From NCBI GenBank assembly GCA_011109175.1, contig RDEW01000106.1, positions 31,001 through 64,000 on the forward strand: a stretch of 33,000 bases of DNA. The letters are read 5' to 3'. The first letter of the stretch is position 1; each line of letters starts with the position of its first letter. Under the pieces are notes generated by a model. The model had not been told where the DNA came from and did not search any database. It saw only the letters and a list, made by a program, of their open reading frames with translations. Of the stretch, positions 1,771-33,000 are shown one piece after another. Made by a program: the position numbers and the translations under genes. This DNA is from Dicyema japonicum (lineage: Eukaryota > Animalia > Dicyemida).

Positions 1771-2044
1771 TTCAAACAACTATACACCACGAAAAAGGGT
1801 GAGAAGGACAATGTGTTATTGACAGGTTCACGTTCTGAAGTGTTATGGTGAAACAACTGAAGAAAAAAAAGAATTTCATTTTCCCAAGAAGATTGGACTT
1901 TCATGATGTAGGTGAGACCAAGGGGATGACAATATAATCTTTAGCCAGAAATTCGCTTAAATTATTCTATCCAAATCTTAGTTGTAACGAGATGGGATAG
2001 CTAGATAAGTGCAGATAAATACAACTCTATGTATGTTATGTTGT

Positions 2045-2380
2045 TTAATTTAGTCGTATCCGACCCTTGGAGATCTCATGAACAAGTTTCCTCCACTCTC
2101 CCCGATCCGTTGCAATTTGAAGTAGCCTTGATATAGGCATATGCGTGACGTCTTCCACCGTGGATAGCCACCGAGTCCTTGGTCGGCTAGGTCTTCTCTT
2201 CCCAATAATATTGCTCAGCATAATGGTTCTTTCTAGTGATTCAGACCGGACAACATGCCCAAAGAACGCCAATCTGTGTTTTACAATTCTTCCCTCTAGC
2301 GAAATGTCAGTCTCTACCCGTTTGAGTACATTGATGGTTGTTACTCTATACATCTTCCCTAATCCGATAATATCAATCAC
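2045..2380 (-). mobile_element. RTE-clade LINE 3' fragment (RT C-terminus)
   Basis: RLAFFGHVVRSESLERTIML..GKRRPSRPRTRWL..DRGEWRKLV is the typical RTE/BovB-like ORF end. Confidence 0.85.
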
Positions 2381-3039
2381 TATTTGATTTCATGAAATGG
2401 AGGAATAAGTGGAAAATCGCTTCGCTTCCTAAAGAAACTTGGACGCTTAGCTACAATAAAAAGCCACGACGCACGTGAGACACGGTGGCTACTCCAGTTG
2501 ATCTCTGTTGCAATCGTGAGTGGCAACGCAACGTCGATAATGTCGGCGGGGTCCACTTTGGATGGATGGCAGTTTTAAATAAAAGAATAAATTGAAAAAT
2601 TAATTTTCTTTATTGTTTGTGATTTGATTTCATTCTTAACAATTTTTATAGGCTTTTTAATTTTTAGGTAAAAATGTCGTTAATTCCCATAAACCCCATC
2701 AAAGGACAGTACTTATATCCGTAGACGTTCAACTCAATTTTATAGGTAAAAATATGCTATTTTCGGAAATTATTCGCTACTAAAAATTGCTACAAATTAG
2801 TGAAAATTGACATAATTAAAATTAATAAACATTTCTCAATTATTCCAATATAAATGGCAATTAAAAATAATTAATTAAAAATTTACTTATATAAACTTTT
2901 CACTGTGTTATAACCTGAAGGGGGTCATGAGAACCAAGATGACCGACCTATCAGCATGTCACTCTATTCTAACCATAATAGTTATTTTGTACAATTTTAA
3001 GTCGTTGTTAGCCCTTACTGATACCAGTCTATTGTTTTC

Positions 3040-3240
3040 TAGACTTTGTTTTTTCTTTTTCTTGGGTGTATGTCTTATATAGACAATCAGGTTCCGCAGT
3101 TAAATGTTCACTGATGACGACATCACTCGTCAAGCCAGAGCATATTAATGCTTGGAACCTTCAACTGAATGTACAGTATCGAGATTCGAACTAGCGACCT
3201 TAAGGCCTCTTGCCCGGCAACCCTTACAGTGCGTTACCCA
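3040..3240 (-). mobile_element. tRNA-derived SINE, diverged copy
   Basis: Shares CACTGATGAC..TCACTCGTCAA, GGAACCT and a GAGATTCGAAC B-box remnant with the copies at 605-930 and 31040-31350. Confidence 0.7.
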
Positions 3241-3768
3241 GATTAGAAAAATTACTAAGAATCTAAGAATTCTATATTATCTAGTCAAAATAGATGTAAC
3301 CTCACTTCAACCTCTTCTTGATGACATGTGAACTAAAGAGACATGTGAACTAAAGAGACATTGAATATACGAAACCTCAAAATAAGGAAGCGTCAATACA
3401 CTATGTTTGGGATTAGAATCTCATTGGCACTAAATTTGAAGGAACTTTGACAAGTCTACTTTGAGGAACTGGCCTCTGAGTCTTTTGTAATCGAGCTTTT
3501 TAATATTTATGAAATTTATGAACGGGACTCACGAAGAAAATGTATAAATTTGAAACGTACGTCAGCAAATAGTAAAACTCCCATCACTTATATAACAAAG
3601 TAGTCCCTCTTCAGTATCCTTAAAATCTTAACCTTATTGTGAACACCAAAATAAAGTAATTTTAAATTTATTGAAGCAAAATAATATTAAAAGTAGCCGA
3701 AATGAACAACAATGATGAAATCAACATACTACTATTCTTTAAGAATTCTACTAATCTCAATCAAATCA

Positions 3769-4542: not shown

Positions 4543-5424
4543 TATGCAAAAATATATTTACGAAAATCTCGCTAATTCTTAAATATATAATATTTGTGGT
4601 TTATGCTGTAATTCCGTGGAAATGTACTCTGGTGAATATTCTACCACAATATATGTTATGTAAACTAAATTTAAAGTACTCGTGGGTTTATAACATAAAC
4701 GATTATCAATTATAATAAATTATATTTTATCAGAAAATATCAATTTGGTTTTAAGTTGAAAATTAATCAGAATATCCAAAATTCTAATTATTTACCACAA
4801 TACGTGACTTTTTCAGGTGTAAAGTTCAGTCATCAAAATAATTTGTGAGATTATGTCATGATTGGTAACCATGATTTCTATGTTGGTAGTAAGTTATGTC
4901 ATTCATTAACAAAATTCTCGAATCACCACATTTCTATGACATTGATAATATTTCGTTAGTGTTTTTTTATTCTTAATTTTTATTAAACGTTTTTAAGTTA
5001 GTTCTTAAACTATAGTAATTAGGGCAATTAGAAAATTGCAATTTTTAAAATATAAATTGCAAAAAATAATTAATTGTAGAAAATTGCATTATGGAAAAAT
5101 AAACGAAATCATTTATTGTAATGCAAAATAAAATATTTCTGAACATTTTCAGGTTTAAAGTTTCGATTTTTAGTCAGAAGTTTGTCATAAGAGATATCAC
5201 CTTTTCAACTAAGGTTGAGCTTCTGCAACAATTTTGAAGGTATGAGTAAATTTCTGGCGAAATAGTTTTATTTAGAAATCAAGAATACTTAGTATCCCAA
5301 ATTTCTGAAGCTTTTTTGATATATAATTTTTTTATATTGCACCGATCTGATGAAAATTCTATGCTGTTCAGATCTCCATAAGATTTTTTAATTCAATATT
5401 CGAGAAAATCAAGATTAAAAAATA

Positions 5425-5680
5425 TGTCGAATTTGGAGACCGCTTTTGTTTTGTACCGGTGGCAATCGAGACGTCTGGTGCCGCGGGAAGTATCACATCC
5501 TCTTCTTTGAAAAAAATCGGGGGAAATTGTCCCACCGTAAAAAAGACGTGCGGGAAGCGGTCTGGCTGAGGCAACGAATTGGAATTGCAGTTGTCCGCGG
5601 AAACGCGTACTCCGTAATGTTAGCAGCCGCTCTTCCTTATAGTTAATAAAAAATATTTTATTGTAAAATAAAACGCAGTA
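5425..5680 (+). mobile_element. CRE-like retrotransposon 3' end fragment
   Basis: FVPVAIETSGAAG..(frameshift)..REAVWLRQRIGIAVVRGNAYSV* followed by an A-rich tail matches the RLE-domain C-terminus. Confidence 0.85.
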
Positions 5681-16910: not shown

Positions 16911-16914
16911 TTGA

Positions 16915-17290
16915 AAAGGGGTTGCCTCTCATGAACCCTATGGAGACCAACTGGATAAACCAGCGTGTTTCGGAGTCGTCGTGGATTCTGAGAAAGGCAT
17001 ACGTTTGAGTTTCTTGATGATTATTGCTCCAGCTATTCCAACAGCGGAAAGTATATCTGTCGAGGAGTCTTCTATACTTATTTTCTAAGCTCCCATTGCT
17101 TTCACGTCAGTAGAACGTGCCTTTGCTGGGCTCCCGATAGGATATGGAGGGACAGAGTCGACACATGCTGTACACAAACAAACCGTTTCCCTCCTCAAAT
17201 GGAAAGATTATTACTTCGTCCAGTCGCTTTCCATTTCCCCTGTCCAGAGAAGCAGAATCCACTATGGAAGCGTGTCCAACAGAGTCTAAT
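16915..17290 (-). mobile_element. Decayed CRE-like RLE / 3' fragment
   Basis: SLDRGNGKRLDEVIIFPFEEG, KYRRLLDRYTF and ETRWFIQLVSIGFMRGN match RLE-end motifs (DGKRPDG..FPF, KY..L..Y.F, QR.S.A..RGN). Confidence 0.75.
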
Positions 17291-17321
17291 GTGCGTTTCA
17301 CGACATCATTCGAGTTAGTGT

Positions 17322-17497
17322 GATGCGGGAACTGGATAGTCTAGAAAGGACCTACACACAAGAAAAAGAAGTGAAGATCATTCCTTGGTTCTACGATTAA
17401 TTAAAATTAACTGTTCTTTACTTAAATAAACTGTGTGTCCTGCCTATGCGGAGCTATAAATACTATAGATCTCGTGAAAAGTCTTTTATTATTAAAT
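17322..17497 (+). mobile_element. tRNA-derived SINE, 5'-truncated copy
   Basis: Near-identical reverse complement of 31040-31208, including the TTTATTATT tail. Confidence 0.85.
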
Positions 17498-18300: not shown

Positions 18301-19149
18301 TCCCAAAAGAGACTCAGCGTCTTTTGTAAAATAATAGATGCTCGCGACAGGCCCTCCACAGGAGCTAGAGCATGTGCACGCGGAGCGATTGCCTCATTTG
18401 TCAGGAACTACCAAAAATGCCTCATTTGTCAGGAAACTCCGAACCAAAATAAAAAATCAAAATTGGAACGACATTTAAAACAAAGCATGCGAATTTTGCA
18501 AAAAAATCCAATTGGCGACTCACGAATGAATGCTGTGTAAGAACTTGCAAAAAATATTCAGATTGAGAGTTCAGTTAAGAGATCGCAAAAAAGGGGAAAA
18601 TTATTTCACGATTTTTCAAATAAGACAGAAATCGTGAATAAAATGAAGAATATAAGTTGCTTTTCTGTTTAATGAACTCGACTTTTTTCATTTTTAATGC
18701 TTTCATTAAAAAATAATGAATAAATTTGTCAAAATTTTAAAATCAATTTAATAAATTTTTTAAGAATAATCAAGATTATTTATTTAATTTTTTCATAAAA
18801 TGAGTTATTAACGATTTTCACTTTTTTAATTTCTAATAAAGTATTACCAGAATTCCGAGAATTGATAATCCACTATTTCCGTATTTTAAAAGTATTTTTA
18901 AAGTTCTTCAATATGATTTATCGCGTCTGCATACCCAATTTCCTTTAATTTTTTTAAAGTTCATTGTTATCTTCATCTCTTCAGAGCTTTTACAGCTTGA
19001 CTCTTAGATTTTTTCCAAGAATTCTACATAATTAAACAAATTTTTATCGATTGTAGAAAAGTTATTGAAATCATATTTATTTTTGAAGTTGAAGTTATCT
19101 AGGGTTTTATTCGCAATAAATTCAATTGATACATAACACTCTAAGAACA

Positions 19150-19550
19150 ACAACTAGAGACAACATTCAGACGTCTGGAGATGCTAGACGCACATACTTC
19201 CCTATTCCTGCTGAGAACGCCTTTATCAGTACAGAAACTGAACTACGTTCTTCGGGGGGCACCCTGCTACCTGAAAATACAACAGCTCGATGCTATAGAT
19301 TCCCTCTTCCGGACCACTATTGAACGTACTACCAATGTGAAATTTGACGACCGTGGTGGGACTAAGCAACCCTACCCGTTAGCTTGAGTGGACTGAGAAT
19401 CCCTTCACCAAAAATCTGGCTTGCCCCGAGTATCTGTCCTATTTAGGCTCCAGCCGACTGCTTATCAGGATGATTCTCCTACTTCAAACAGAATCATCTG
19501 AAATCACAGATATGGAGCATTTGAAAGGGATGATGTCTGAGCAGAAGAAA
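19150..19550 (+). mobile_element. CRE-like RT thumb fragment
   Basis: LDAHTSLFLLR..VQKLNYVLRGAPCY..TNVKFDD..ATLPVSLSGLRI is homologous to LDSHTSFFLMR..LPKLLYLLRCSPCY in the 31385-32010 segment. Confidence 0.8.
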
Positions 19551-26760: not shown

Positions 26761-27276
26761 CGTCAGATTATGTGGACTTAATTCCGAAATACTGAAGGTA
26801 GCCCAATCAAACGACCTTGTCCAGAATCAGTCTGATGTAATGTTTCAAGGATACGTGTAATTTTCAGTTGTTGGTTATTTCAATCATTGGGTTACTTCCT
26901 ATTTTAGAAAGTCCCCGATAATGGGGAATATTATCAAAGACTGGGGGAAGTATCTATTTCCTTTTTTGGAGACAAAATTGACAAAAAACCAAAGTGACAT
27001 TCCGCGTAGTTATGAATATTGATTAAATTGAGTAAGGATAAAATTTGTGGGAGATCACAGCCAATGGTCTCTCCTAAAATTCCATATTTACCCCCGGACC
27101 CTTCAAGCGAAGGAAACTGGTGGCTAACAAGAGCTTAGTTACCAGGACCAGAGGTTTCCACCTTTTTTACACGCCTCCCTCAGAAAAAATACAATCTTGC
27201 GCCTCCCTTTATATTCCATGATATAATAAAAATATTATTTTTAACAGAAACAATTTTTTAACACAAAAACTTAGTG

Positions 27277-27425
27277 CTTGCCAGGAAAAAAAGGATCAAC
27301 AAGAAGGGTTCTGACTGAGACAAAAGATTGGAATGGCCATTCTCCGAGAAAACTCGTTCGCGATTTACGCAGCAGGCTCCTCAATTAACATTTGTTTCTT
27401 TGTTAAAAATTGTCTTTAAAAAAAG
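27277..27425 (+). mobile_element. Severely 5'-truncated copy of the same CRE family as 31385-32641
   Basis: Highly similar to 32477-32630 (ORF end, 3'UTR, A-tail). It is flanked by AAAAA(C/G)TTAGTG at 27265-27276 and 27420-27431, a probable TSD with one mismatch. Confidence 0.85.
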
Positions 27426-27904
27426 TTAGTGAAATAATTTTTTTCATTCTTGACAATTTTTTAAATCTCTGTGTCATTGAGGAGAGTGATACCCTAGCGC
27501 ACCAATAAACGAGTTTGATATTTAGATTCCATTGCATCTAGTGCAGAAAATCCAGTTTCGAATAAATATGAAGTAAAAATGGAAACTTTCATGCTTTTAT
27601 CTACAAAATTTCATATTTTTTACACCGATAATAATGGCAATTCTATCGATTTTTTTTTCAAAAGTTGTCAATACAAGTTATCAATGAACAGATCATGTAT
27701 CCATCCAAACGTTTTACATGCGAAATCTTCAAAATAGTGAGCAAAAATGCTTTGACAAACAATTAAATTTATCAACCCTGGATACACCGAGAAAGAAGTT
27801 AAAGTAAACAACTAATTAAGTGTATCCAGTTTCCACTTTTACAGAGACAAAGCCATCCGGAGTCAACATAAAAGGAAAAAGACGTCCATATATGTGCAGT
27901 TGTG

Positions 27905-29679: not shown

Positions 29680-30125
29680 AAGGTTTCTGAGTATTTAAAA
29701 AAACTCTTAGGGTGAGTGTCGAGGACTCCAGATGTTTTCATAGCTGGTGGAACGAATGTAAAATCACCGGGGCCAACATATAAATTTGAATGTCGGGTCT
29801 CTTAGCAGCTGACACTATCGAATGACGTTGTCCAATGCTTACGTAAAGTTTTGTTAGCACTTTTCCTGCAAGCGAGTGAAAAGTCCAAATCATCAATTCA
29901 CTAGCAATGTCTGATCTGGTGTGGCTTACAAATCTTCAATCCAAGGCGCAGTGAGACTCCTACTTCAATGGAATCGTCGTTGATTAGTTAGAATACTCCG
30001 TTTAGAATGACGTTGAGCTATGCCTTTCCTTGGGAGAGGCTCCGGACAGTAGAAGGTGTTGGTGGAGGACTCCAAAATCTTAAAATTATTCCTGCAAACA
30101 ACATCGTCTAGACTGGGAAAAGCGA
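29680..30125 (-). mobile_element. Decayed CRE-like retrotransposon (thumb end, zinc knuckle, RLE end; deleted)
   Basis: DDVVC, SGA, INDDSIEVGVSLRLGLKICKPH, LACRKSA and FTFVP.AMKTSGVL appear in CRE order. Confidence 0.75.
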
Positions 30126-31039
30126 GAACGAAAATGATCTCGGGTAGATGACCGACTTCTCGTCAGAAGATCCTAAGCATAGTCGACCCTCGCGACCTGG
30201 CCATTTTTGGTTCCTAGAATTTTATTTTTTCTGATTCTTGCAATTTTCTAAATAATTTCATTTTCATTAAATGCAAAAAATGCGGCCATGGTAGATATTA
30301 AGGCATCATATAGAAAACCAACAAGAAATTCGATTTTCGAAAAAAATACCTTTAGACTCTACCACCTCCATCCATTCTGCAAACTTCTCTTCAAGCTTTG
30401 GAAACTTTGGCTTTAAAAGAAGGTCGATATTTTTTAGAATCTATCAAAATAGTGTCCTTTTTCAGTATAGATTATTGTTTTTTTTCGTTTTTTGATACAT
30501 TTATTTATCAAAAACACAAAAATCAATCAAAAATGATCTCACTAACATAATCGACGTTGCCTTCACGATCGCAACAAGATCAAATTGAGAAGTCACCAAT
30601 ATCCACGTGCGTCGTGGCTTTTTAGTGTAGCTAGGCGTCCCGCTTATTCGTCCTGTTGTTTCAACTACGAGGGGGCACGTGAACCGATCGTGCAACACTT
30701 CCTATTTTTTCCTTTGCTTTCATTGTTTTTTTCAGCGGCATGCAGAGTGTCTACCGCGCTCCCGACTATGTTGATGGCAAAGGGGTCGACGTAAGTAGCA
30801 TCCCATACCAAAGGATTCCCTCCTCGGATGGAAAAATTGTAATTTCGTCCGTTCGTTTTCCATCTCTTCTGTCCGGGCCAACAGATTCAAGTATGCAGGG
30901 GTATCCATCAGACTCCAGGACTCGCTTAACAATTCCGTTCATAGCCTTATGTCTTGGGAATCGTCCTGCACTTATTCGGGAAAAAAGAGCATGCTTTCCA
31001 TTATTTTCTCGACACGAGAAGCATTGGAAGACGTGTTAA

Positions 31040-31350
31040 TAATAATAAAGCCTTTTCACTAGAGCCATAGTATTTATAGCTCCGCATAGGCAGGACACAC
31101 ACTTTTTTAAGTAAAGAACAGTTAATTTTAACTAATCGTAGAACCAAGGAATGATCTTCACTTCTTTTTTTCTATTTTGTGTGAGTGTCCTTTCTAGACA
31201 ATCCAGTTCTGCAGTGAGTATCCACTGATGACGGCGTCACTCGTCAAACCCTTTCTGCATCGTAGATGCGTGGAACCTTCCACCAGGTGAACAGCAGCAA
31301 GATTCGAACCCGTAGCCTAAGCCACTTAAGCCCGACACCTAACCACTATG
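31040..31350 (-). mobile_element. tRNA-derived SINE, full-length-looking copy
   Basis: Minus strand has AGTGGTTAGG A-box-like and GGTTCGAATC B-box sequences, the shared body and a TTTATTATTATT tail. Confidence 0.85.
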
Positions 31351-31384
31351 CACAAATTTTATTTTTTTTCAATTTCTATTAAAA

Positions 31385-32641
31385 GGCATCCCAGCCTTTG
31401 TCCGATTCCAATCATCAAAGAATCGTCGTCCAAAAAGGTCCCGAGGTTTGGGCAAGGTATTGCACCAAGCCATGCTCCACTCCCTCGACTTAAAGCTGAC
31501 ACCAAACAAGCCAGACGATGTTGATTTGCTTCTTTTTTAAGGTCTTCCAAAGTTTTGGAGCAGACAATGTCATCCCAATTACTTTGCTTCGTTGTGTCTT
31601 CGGGGATTTTGAGTCCGGACCCGTTCCATTTCCGACAAGCTTCGTCAAATGACTCATTCCAGCGAAGTCCAATAGTGTTATGAAGGACTTGCCGTGTCAA
31701 ATGGCTGCAGCTTGAGAGAGACGATAGATATGCCGGGTACGCAACCTCCAGCGCCGATCTTATTCCGACACCCCCAAATCCAGAGGGAAGCTTACATTGT
31801 TTCCAACCAAGTTCGTCGAAGCGGACGTTAATTAGTGACTCAACAGTTTGCTTGAGAGACTTGTCTATTGAAAGTAGAATGTCATATTGTTCGTAGCAGG
31901 GTGAACATCGGAGTAGATATAAAAGCTTGGGTAGTCCGATGTTGTTTCTCATCAGGAAGAAAGATGTGTGAGAGTCAAGACATGATAATCTTTTCGCAAG
32001 GCGTGTTAATGGCTGGGACTAGACGTTTGCAGGAGCACCGATGCCGATGCGGGAAAACAGTCGATGCGAAAGGATTGCACCCGCTATCCTGCAGAAGAAG
32101 CGCCGGAAGGGGACCACGCCATGCCGCTCTGAACGATGTGATCGTCAGAGCTCTGAAGGCTTCAGGCTTCCCAGCACAGCTTGAACCAGTGGGTCTTGAT
32201 CGAGGAGATGGGAAGAGACCTGACGGGATGACCCTTTTCCCCTTCACGTCTGGAAGATCTTTGGTCTGGGACGCAACTTGCATAGACACGTTCTCAAGCG
32301 CGAACATTTTTAAATCGGTTTAGACACCTGGATCAGCTGCTTCGACTGCGGAAAACCAAAAAATCAAGAAATATTCTTGCCTCGGGAATCGCTACCGATT
32401 TACTCCTGTTGCGACCGAATCATCGGGAGCCGTTGGTCCAATGACGGCTGAATTCTTGCAAGAACTCGGAGGATTGCTTGCCAGAAAGAAAAGGGATCAA
32501 CGAGAAGGGTTCAGACTGAGACAAAAGATCGGAATGGCCATTCTCCGAAGGAACTCGTTCGCGATTCACGCAGCAGGCTTCCTCAAATAACATTTGTTTT
32601 TTTGTTAAAAAATTTTTTTGTATTAAAAAAAAAGAAGAAAA
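31385..32641. mobile_element. 5'-inverted, 5'-truncated CRE-like non-LTR retrotransposon with A-tail and 14-bp TSD
   Basis: 31389-~32010 encodes the RT thumb on the minus strand, ending in GQRLG. ~32011-32590 encodes LGLDVC/EHRCRCG..H..C, DGKRPDG, WDATC and the ORF end on the plus strand. A-rich tail at 32625-32641; AATTTCTATTAAAA at 31371-31384 and 32642-32655. Confidence 0.92.
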
Positions 32642-32734
32642 AATTTCTATTAAAATAATTTCAAAAATTGTGGCCAATTAATAATAAGAACTGTCTTAAA
32701 TAATAGAACGTTTTCCCAGGCACTCCTGTCTTAA

Positions 32735-33000
32735 CATGACATTAAAGAATTCCCTTGCCTCTGCTGGACACCATTGCCTGTTAGAACCTGCTGGTCTTTC
32801 CCGAAACGATGGAAACGCCCTGATGGGATGACGACTTTTCCATTCGCCAACGGACGAAACCTGATCTGGGACGCGACGTGTGTTGATACTTATTCCCCGT
32901 CTAATTTGGTTGCTTCTGCTTCAAACCCAGGACATGCTTCAAAGCAGGCCGAGGAACGAAAGAGGAGGAAGTATCAGAGAATTTCGGAGAGTATCTTTTT
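32735..33000 (+). mobile_element. CRE-like RLE fragment of a different subfamily, running off the window end
   Basis: SLASAGHHCLLEPAGLSRNDG/KRPDGMTTFPFANGRNLIWDATCVDTYS..AEERKRRKY. Confidence 0.88.

What the first reader, a model, noticed from the sequence alone, without database searches (positions are those of the whole stretch)
31371..32655. Twin-priming-type 5' inversion in a restriction-like-endonuclease (CRE) retrotransposon
Seen: the order is TSD AATTTCTATTAAAA, an antisense segment, a sense segment, the A-tail, then the identical 14-bp TSD. The antisense segment's coding end (..GIGQRLG) abuts the left TSD, and the sense segment begins at the same point in the protein (LGLDVC-EHRCRCG; compare RLGLKICKPH in the 29680-30125 copy). 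GGCTGGGA is present at both breakpoints (31389-31396 inverted, 32011-32018). The inverted part is open for ~210 codons, so the insertion is young. Established: this geometry is the twin-priming product described chiefly for APE-endonuclease mammalian L1; RLE elements such as R2 are known for simple 5' truncations. Inference: this CRE family makes a staggered second-strand cut early enough for internal priming. I am not aware of this being described for the clade, but could not check the literature.
Basis: partly seen in the sequence, partly recalled or inferred. Interest (0 to 1): 0.82.

Follow-up and report, generated by a model that had tools for sequence, protein, structure and literature searches.

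The report
Half-inverted retrotransposon copy, twin-priming type
One dead, truncated copy of a 3-kb jumping gene has its front half flipped in the way expected if both cut DNA ends started copying the same RNA; this "twin priming" is well known for mammalian L1, but I found no report of it for this endonuclease class, and it is rare here (about 1 copy in 100).

Summary
An exact 14-bp duplication (31371-84 and 32642-55) flanks one composite. Window 31389-32010 is the reverse complement of element positions 1880-2501. Window 32011-32645 is positions 2494-3125 plus an A-rich tail. GGCTGGGA (2494-2501) lies in both pieces, so the pieces tile one 5'-truncated copy with an 8-nt overlap.

Three corrections:
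- Four unmatched bases (GGCA) sit between the left duplication and the inverted piece.
- The internal junction is blunt.
- The window lacks one base after 32029.

Short-read unitigs from one sample span the left and internal junctions. The junction sequence is unique in the assembly.

The family is a roughly 3.07-kb single-ORF LINE: PHD finger, reverse transcriptase, CCHC knuckle, then a PD-(D/E)XK endonuclease. A confident model of that endonuclease region matches only R2 proteins strongly. The family has at least 269 dispersed copies with 10-15-bp duplications. So "restriction-like-endonuclease LINE" is supported. "CRE clade" is not: the family is not site-specific and has a PHD rather than a C2H2 finger.

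Twin priming is the best explanation (about 0.8). Snap-back synthesis, reported for R2 proteins, does not fit. Of roughly 95 copies that could be phased with sequence anchors, only this one is inverted. It is a rare by-product, not a family habit.

The parts
31371..31384 (.). Left copy of the 14-bp target-site duplication AATTTCTATTAAAA
31385..31388 (.). Four extra bases (GGCA) between the duplication and the inverted piece; not templated by the adjacent element sequence
   Evidence: the element continues CTAG after GGCTGGGA, not TGCC; matches start at query base 5
31389..32010 (-). Inverted 5' piece, equal to element positions 1880-2501 (end of the RT/linker region up to ...GIGQRLG); open for 211 codons on the minus strand
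   Evidence: 98.7% identity to L031
31389..31396 (-). TCCCAGCC, the reverse complement of GGCTGGGA (element 2494-2501); first copy of the 8-nt overlap
32011..32018 (+). GGCTGGGA (element 2494-2501); second copy of the 8-nt overlap and start of the sense piece
32011..32590 (+). Sense 3' piece, coding part: CCHC knuckle and PD-(D/E)XK endonuclease domain up to the ORF stop; broken by a 1-nt assembly gap (or stop) after 32029 and a stop at 32321-32323
32591..32641 (+). 3' UTR and A-rich tail (…TATTAAAAAAAAAGAAGAAAA)
32642..32655 (.). Right copy of the 14-bp target-site duplication
31067..31351 (.). Left flank: a very high-copy short repeat (not part of the element). Unique target DNA is only about 31352-31384 and 32656-32708
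   Evidence: depth and loose ends at 31348-51; no tRNA or Rfam match
32709..33000 (+). Right flank: a fragment of another high-copy family encoding a related endonuclease C-terminus (43-53% aa identity)

Best explanation
This is a single retrotransposition event of a non-site-specific, restriction-like-endonuclease (RLE) LINE, made by twin (dual) priming.

Inferred steps:
1. The bottom-strand nick primed cDNA on the A-rich 3' end of the RNA.
2. Before that cDNA passed position about 2494, the top strand was already cut 14 bp away.
3. The top strand's 3'-OH (…CTATTAAAA-3'), after gaining 4 extra bases (GGCA), primed a second cDNA inside the same RNA at position 2501. That cDNA ran to 1880.
4. 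The first cDNA ran 8 nt into the region already copied by the second one.
5. The two cDNA ends (1880 and 2494) were joined bluntly, probably by host end-joining.

The result reads: duplication, GGCA, reverse complement of 2501..1880, then 2494..3125, A-tail, duplication.

SHOWN: the geometry, the duplication, the overlap, the class of element, and the local reality of both junctions.
INFERRED: the order of cuts, the identity of the primer, one RNA as template for both cDNAs, and the joining pathway.
For: 1. An exact 14-bp duplication flanks the whole composite. No random pair of stretches from the window reaches 14. Full-length copies of the family also make 10-15-bp duplications. That is the length range in which L1 5' inversions occur (PMC4245944).
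2. The two pieces tile one truncated copy, 1880-2501 inverted and 2494-3125 sense, with an 8-nt overlap. By chance, an inverted fragment would end within 10 nt of the sense start in under 1% of cases for a 3-kb element.
3. The inverted piece has no tail, and its element-3' end faces the upstream duplication, as the model requires.
4. Both halves share diagnostic variants with the same sub-lineage (L008, L022, L026, L030, L049).
5. The junction 26-mer is unique in the 67.5-Mb assembly, so this is one event and not a propagating variant.
6. Unitigs from runs X3, X4 and X5 cover 31324-31422 (X3 to 31418) without a difference. Unitigs from X3 and X5 cover 31981-32050 and 31965-32044, at depths similar to the left junction.
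7. The element carries an R2-type endonuclease.
Against: - No microhomology exists between the presumed primer (…TTAAAA) and the RNA at 2501. Instead there are 4 untemplated bases. The internal junction also has no microhomology.
- The sense half has 2-3 times more private substitutions than the inverted half. Asymmetries of similar size occur in uninverted copies (L008, L018, L025).
- Only one such copy was found among about 95 phased copies. The family shows no general tendency.
- The supporting reads come from one sample, which may be the assembly's own.
- The right-hand junction was skipped by the read tool as a simple repeat.
- No empty allele was found.
- A later inversion with one breakpoint at the element's 5' end gives nearly the same picture.
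Confidence: 0.8

Rival explanations
1. An ordinary 5'-truncated insertion (1880-3125) was inverted later across its first 622 bp. This could happen by break repair, or by recombination between an 8-bp inverted repeat that happened to lie in a 12-nt 5' filler (GGCATCCCAGCC) and GGCTGGGA at 2494-2501.
For: The final arrangement is formally the same. Inverted copies of the 8-mer sit at both ends of the flipped segment.
Against: One breakpoint must fall within 4 nt of the element/target boundary. In the repeat version, a filler must by chance contain the complement of an 8-mer 614 nt downstream. No uninverted allele was seen.
Confidence: 0.08
2. The inverted piece arose by snap-back or another template switch. 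The first-strand cDNA folded back and copied itself, as reported for R2 proteins in human cells, or the enzyme switched to another nucleic acid.
For: R2 proteins give 5' junctions with antisense cargo next to the upstream target (PMC11371274). Two other copies here (L037, L051) carry inverted 3'-terminal fragments in front of a full-length 5' end.
Against: Snap-back copies the cDNA already made. The antisense piece would then duplicate sequence downstream of the sense start. Here 1880-2493 occurs only once, inverted, and only 8 nt are duplicated.
Confidence: 0.04
3. Two independent insertions lie side by side: a truncated sense copy and a fragment of another copy in the opposite orientation.
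For: The neighbourhood is full of fragments of related elements. Convergent or nested pairs exist elsewhere (C101:61277/61504 and C79:223765/225214).
Against: The inverted piece has no 3' end, no tail and no duplication of its own. It ends exactly where the sense piece begins. The 14-bp duplication embraces both.
Confidence: 0.03
4. Assembly artefact: two reads of different copies were joined at a repeat.
For: The family has hundreds of copies 95-99% alike. The window has a 1-nt error after 32029.
Against: Short-read unitigs from three runs reproduce the left junction and from two runs the internal junction, at comparable depth. The junction word is unique.
Confidence: 0.03

Closest known systems
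Twin-priming 5' inversions of mammalian L1 (Ostertag and Kazazian 2001; analysed in PMC4245944 and PMC2912911)
   Same: A duplication of 10-20 bp flanks the whole insert. The 5' part is inverted and tail-less. The inversion point carries a small duplication. The insert is truncated and dead.
   Different: The element has a C-terminal PD-(D/E)XK endonuclease instead of an N-terminal APE. No microhomology is visible at the second priming site; there are 4 extra bases instead. Frequency is about 1% of phased copies, against roughly a fifth to a quarter of human L1 insertions (the L1 figure is from memory, not from a tool).
'Snap-back' 5' junctions made by avian R2 proteins in human cells (PRINT, PMC11371274)
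   Same: An RLE-LINE protein; antisense element sequence abuts the upstream target.
   Different: Snap-back duplicates sequence already present in the sense cDNA. Here the antisense piece is the missing upstream part and occurs only once.
R2 and the ordered two-cleavage model (PMC6895275, PMC10499050)
   Same: The fold and motifs of the linker, CCHC and RLE region; a single ORF; target-primed reverse transcription.
   Different: R2 is specific for 28S rDNA, has zinc-finger/Myb N-terminal domains, and cuts the second strand late with a stagger of a few bp. This family is dispersed, has a PHD finger, and leaves 10-15-bp duplications.
[quoted passage not shown]
   Same: Size (3.2-3.7 kb), a single ORF of about 1000 aa, dispersed insertion, C-terminal CCHC plus endonuclease.
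   Different: BLAG has CCHH fingers and a 'Blag' motif. Neither is evident here. The relationship was not tested by a tree.
The single Nimb-2_DR 5' inversion in chicken cells (PMC4245944)
   Same: A rare 5' inversion in a non-L1 LINE with duplications of about 12 bp.
   Different: Nimb is an APE-type LINE, and that event was seen in a cell-culture assay.

Membership tests
RLE-bearing (R2-like, early-branching) LINE | Single ORF with a reverse-transcriptase domain | tested here: met
   RVT_1 matched at E = 1e-12. One natural copy has an open frame of 780 codons and another has 502 C-terminal codons. The best solved-structure sequence hits are R2 proteins.
RLE-bearing (R2-like, early-branching) LINE | CCHC knuckle downstream of the RT/linker region | tested here: met
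   C81, C83, H93 and C97 are invariant in 40 homologues. The spacing is CX1CX9HX3C, which differs from the CX2-3CX7-8HX4C quoted for R2 (PMC5678591).
RLE-bearing (R2-like, early-branching) LINE | C-terminal PD-(D/E)XK endonuclease with a distant catalytic K | tested here: met
   P140, D141, D157 and K187 are invariant. The model has pLDDT 93.3. The seven Foldseek matches at E <= 0.001 are all R2 proteins (E 1e-5 to 8e-4); weaker matches include Holliday-junction resolvases, Prp8 and cap-snatching nucleases.
RLE-bearing (R2-like, early-branching) LINE | N-terminal zinc-finger/Myb DNA-binding region | tested here: not met
   The N-terminus is a PHD-type finger. It matches PDB PHD domains, and PF00628 is present in homologues. 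No Myb domain was detected.
CRE clade (CRE1, CRE2, SLACS, CZAR) | Site-specific insertion (spliced-leader genes) | tested here: not met
   Copies lie on many contigs, each with a different 10-15-bp duplication in AT-rich DNA.
CRE clade (CRE1, CRE2, SLACS, CZAR) | Grouping with CRE elements in an RT phylogeny | not testable with these tools
   No CRE, NeSL, HERO or R4 reference sequences could be obtained. Only R2 is in the solved-structure set.
Twin-priming product | One target-site duplication flanks the inverted and sense pieces together; the tail is only on the sense piece | tested here: met
Twin-priming product | The element-3' end of the inverted piece abuts the upstream duplication and coincides (give or take a few nt) with the start of the sense piece | tested here: met
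   Inverted piece 1880-2501, sense piece 2494-3125, 8-nt overlap
Twin-priming product | Both pieces derive from one RNA | tested here: inconclusive
   Sub-lineage variants are shared, but private divergence is unequal. The overlap is too short to compare the pieces directly.
Twin-priming product | Complementarity between the top-strand 3' overhang and the internal priming site | tested here: not met
   There is a 4-nt filler (GGCA) and no match between …TTAAAA and the sequence downstream of 2501.
Twin-priming product | The structure is real in the DNA (spanning reads) | tested here: inconclusive
   Unitigs of 71-99 nt span the left and internal junctions. There are no long reads over the whole 1.3 kb. 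The right junction was skipped as a simple repeat. All supporting runs come from one sample.

The most novel reading that the evidence does not exclude
In RLE-type LINEs that leave long (10-15-bp) duplications, the second-strand cut can precede completion of first-strand synthesis. The freed top-strand 3'-OH can then be used by the element's own reverse transcriptase without base pairing, after untemplated addition. This differs from the strictly ordered 'first cDNA, then second cut' scheme derived from R2. The inverted 3'-terminal fragments in front of two full-length copies (L037, L051) would be products of the same top-strand priming, started at an RNA 3' end.
Probability: 0.2. Interest if true: 0.55.

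Novelty: new member of a known kind. Interest (0 to 1): 0.4.

Why it matters
5' inversions are treated as a near-specific signature of L1 in human cells. They are used to argue about when the second strand is cut and how long the overhang must be (PMC4245944).

A clean twin-priming-type copy in a LINE with a different, R2-type endonuclease has two implications:
- The geometry depends on the long staggered cut rather than on the APE endonuclease.
- It gives a natural data point on the timing of second-strand cleavage in RLE LINEs. That question is now also relevant to R2-based gene insertion tools.

The weight is limited. This is one old, dead copy at a frequency of about 1%, and the mechanism is inferred from the end product.

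Tried and rejected
- A genome-wide census by fetching copies was cut short. I replaced it with exact anchor words at element positions 1788, 2230, 2472, 2619 and 2841. Listings are capped at 100 rows, so I phased copies by hand.
- The anchor screen can only see inversion points between 1788 and 2841, and only inverted pieces long enough to hold an anchor.
- A 5'-truncation hotspot at 2494 was considered and rejected. Counts fall gradually: at least 269 at 2841, 257 at 2619, 197 at 2472, 98 at 2230 and 73 at 1788.
- Snap-back synthesis was rejected on geometry.
- L051's inverted fragment is only 93% identical to that copy's own 3' end, so it is not a fresh self-copy.
- Pfam does not recognise the C-terminal domain. 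The left flank gave no tRNA or Rfam match.
- The right flank (32656-33000) found no empty-site copy elsewhere in the assembly. No empty-site joint appeared in the reads.
- The protein atlas gave no clade name.
- No family consensus was built. A natural copy (L031) served as the ruler.

Full report
WHAT IS THERE

The window is contig C8:31001-64000 of a 67.5-Mb, AT-rich eukaryotic assembly. AATTTCTATTAAAA occurs at 31371-31384 and at 32642-32655. It is the longest word shared by the two flanks. In 2000 pairs of equally spaced stretches drawn from the window, none shared 14 or more bases.

Between the two copies lie, in order:
- four bases, GGCA;
- a 622-bp piece that is open on the minus strand for 211 codons and ends ...GIGQRLG;
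- a 580-bp plus-strand piece that starts at the same point of the protein and runs to the ORF stop;
- a short 3' UTR and an A-rich tail.

THE FAMILY AND THE RULER

The 1257 bp between the duplications hit more than 30 other places in the genome. At each, the reverse complement of bases 5-626 is followed directly by bases 624-1257 on one strand. The normal element is therefore collinear, and only this copy is flipped.

Many copies share one 5' end, (A)CACGTTTATTAAGTGG. The full length is about 3.07 kb. I built no consensus. A natural copy, L031:6701-9830, served as the ruler.

On this ruler, window 31389-32010 is the reverse complement of 1880-2501 at 98.7% identity. BLAST extends the sense alignment to 32008-32645 = 2491-3125 at 93.0%. 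Inspection puts the true start of the sense piece at 32011 = 2494.

GGCTGGGA (2494-2501) is present in both pieces. The two pieces therefore tile one 5'-truncated copy, 1880-3125, with an 8-nt overlap. The four bases GGCA next to the left duplication do not continue the element, which reads CTAG there. The internal junction is blunt.

WHAT KIND OF ELEMENT

Natural copies give an open frame of 780 codons (L036) and a C-terminal stretch of 502 codons (L032). The ORF of about 950 aa starts roughly 40 nt from the 5' end. It encodes:
- a PHD-type finger (matches to PDB PHD domains; PF00628 in homologues);
- a reverse transcriptase (RVT_1, E = 1e-12);
- a C-terminal region that Pfam does not recognise.

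In an alignment with 39 homologues of 36-58% identity over this part, these residues are invariant: C81, C83, H93 and C97 (a CCHC knuckle), R106-H107...N111, P140-D141-G142, W156-D157-x-T159, and K187.

An AlphaFold model of this 262-aa part has mean pLDDT 93.3. Its seven matches at E <= 0.001 among solved structures are all R2 retrotransposon proteins of silkworm, zebra finch and turtle (E from 1e-5 to 8e-4, probability 1.0). Weaker matches include Holliday-junction resolvases, Prp8 and viral cap-snatching nucleases. That is the PD-(D/E)XK neighbourhood described for RLE LINEs (PMC5678591). The RT also matches R2 best by sequence. 'Restriction-like-endonuclease LINE' is therefore supported.

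'CRE' is not supported. The classical CRE clade is site-specific (PMC4640811). This family is dispersed and makes a different 10-15-bp duplication at each site: AAGACAATTATTTA, AATTGTTCGA, and about AATTTACAAA. Its N-terminal finger is a PHD, not a C2H2. The cockroach BLAG elements are similar in size and habit but have CCHH fingers and a motif not evident here (PMC7650587). I could not obtain reference sequences of the other RLE clades, so the clade remains unnamed.

IS THE STRUCTURE REAL

Four public runs were laid on 31000-33000.
- Unitigs of runs X3, X4 and X5 (one sample) cover 31324-31422 (X3 to 31418) without a difference. That span takes in the flank, the duplication, GGCA and 30-34 nt of the inverted piece.
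- Unitigs of X3 (31981-32050) and X5 (31965-32044) cross the internal junction with at least 30 nt on either side. Their depth is close to that of the left junction in X3 (290 against 317).
- These unitigs carry one extra T after 32029. The window therefore lacks a base there, and the codon reads TAG where other copies have CAG.
- The right junction was skipped as a simple repeat.
- No joint matching an empty site was listed.
- The fourth run, from another sample, is too thin to say anything.

A 26-mer across the internal junction occurs once in the assembly, even with three mismatches allowed. The unique 53 nt of the right flank occur only here. The insertion sits in about 86 bp of unique DNA between a very high-copy short repeat (up to 31351) and a fragment of another RLE-LINE family (from 32709).

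ONE EVENT OR TWO

The inverted half differs from the majority of 30 uninverted copies at 10 sites. Five of these are shared with 8-13 copies. The sense half differs at 21 sites, about 14 of them private and some clustered.

The shared variants of both halves point to the same sub-lineage: L008, L022, L026, L030 and L049.

The excess of private changes in the sense half is unexplained. Uninverted copies show the same kind of asymmetry, though. Nearest-neighbour identities for the two halves are 98.9 against 96.6% in L008, 99.2 against 94.1% in L025, and 98.7 against 96.9% in L018. I do not read the asymmetry as two origins.

The inverted piece has no 3' end, no tail and no duplication of its own.

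MECHANISM

The arrangement is the one predicted by twin priming:
- The bottom-strand nick primes on the tail.
- The top-strand 3'-OH, freed 14 bp away, primes a second cDNA inside the same RNA.
- The first cDNA stops where the second began; here it overran by 8 nt.
- The two cDNA ends are joined.

The 14-bp stagger fits the finding that L1 5' inversions go with duplications of 10-20 bp and that a 5-bp overhang does not support them (PMC4245944).

There are two departures from the L1 picture:
- No complementarity between the overhang and the priming site, with four extra bases instead.
- A blunt internal joint.

Priming without base pairing, and extra nucleotides at junctions, are reported traits of R2-type enzymes. 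That statement comes from my own knowledge and was not tested here.

Snap-back synthesis is the known way in which R2 proteins place antisense sequence at the upstream junction (PMC11371274). It would duplicate sequence already present in the sense cDNA. Here 1880-2493 occurs only once, so snap-back does not fit.

A later inversion needs a breakpoint within 4 nt of the element boundary. It cannot be excluded without another allele.

HOW OFTEN

Counts of matches were:

| Element position | Matches | Mismatches allowed |
|---|---|---|
| 2841 | 269 | 0 |
| 2619 | 257 | up to 2 |
| 2472 | 197 | up to 2 |
| 2230 | 98 | 0 |
| 1788 | 73 | 0 |

Counts fall smoothly towards the 5' end, as expected for 5' truncation. 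There is no step at 2494.

I phased neighbouring anchors by strand and spacing. About 95 distinct copies have at least one correctly spaced same-strand pair. Only C8 (this copy) has an upstream anchor on the opposite strand in divergent order: 2230 on minus at 62643, and 2619 and 2841 on plus at 63135 and 63363.

Two convergent opposite-strand pairs look like neighbouring or nested insertions: C101:61277/61504 and C79:223765/225214.

The screen sees only inversion points between 1788 and 2841, and only inverted pieces that contain an anchor. The listings are also capped. The estimate of about 1% is therefore rough.

LITERATURE

Only one paper in the searchable library holds both 'twin priming' and 'restriction-like endonuclease'. 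It merely says that L1 twin priming may be related to second-strand synthesis (PMC6895275). Further searches found no report of a twin-priming-type copy of an RLE LINE. Absence from this library is not proof of absence.

VERDICT

The clade name is unsupported. The generalisation to the family is not borne out. This is a new member of a known kind of product, of moderate interest.

Noticed in passing
L037:345-470 and 3240-3270 (C301:82244-82369, 85139-85169): A full-length copy is preceded by T9 plus the reverse complement of the last ~65 nt of the 3' UTR, followed by a partly duplicated 5' end. The composite is flanked by AAGT(T/C)ATTAAA on both sides. This could be top-strand priming on an RNA tail or a tiny earlier insertion. 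The inverted bit is only ~81% like the reference copy's 3' UTR.
   Followed up: partly
L051:298-486 (C321:87497-87685): The reverse complement of element 2886-3066 abuts the 5' end of a full-length copy. No clear duplication was found. The fragment is 93% identical to that copy's own 3' region, so it is not a recent self-copy.
   Followed up: partly
window 32029/32030: The assembly lacks one base that the junction-spanning unitigs have (T, giving TAG). Uninverted copies have C (CAG) at this position.
   Followed up: yes
window 31389-32600: The sense half of the copy has about 2-3 times more private substitutions than the inverted half. Several uninverted copies show the same 3'-half excess, which suggests the 3' 600 nt of this family is more heterogeneous (possibly recombinant lineages).
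   Followed up: partly
window 2396-2551, 5393-5634, 16912-17328, 19148-19378, 27275-27439, 29841-29987, 30808-31035, 32709-32989: The window holds at least eight further fragments of related RLE-LINE families (30-72% aa identity to this family's C-terminus). The one from 32709 belongs to a family with at least 170 near-identical copies.
   Followed up: partly
window 31067-31351: A short repeat with extremely high unitig depth (about 1e6 in run X3, against about 300 for unique junctions). Its end at 31348-51 is marked by loose ends. It looks like a SINE head, but ARAGORN and Rfam find nothing.
   Followed up: partly
G000:C101:61277-61521: Anchor 1788 on the plus strand lies 227 bp from anchor 2841 on the minus strand, in convergent order. 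This is probably a copy nested in, or abutting, another copy. The DNA could not be fetched.
   Followed up: no
G000:C360:123776-123906: A copy with a ~130-bp internal tandem duplication around element position 2494-2590, the same neighbourhood as the inversion point.
   Followed up: no
L040 and L041 (C315:33800-37700, C367:900800-904800): Two full-length copies share the same flanks on both sides. This is a segmental duplication, not two insertions.
   Followed up: no
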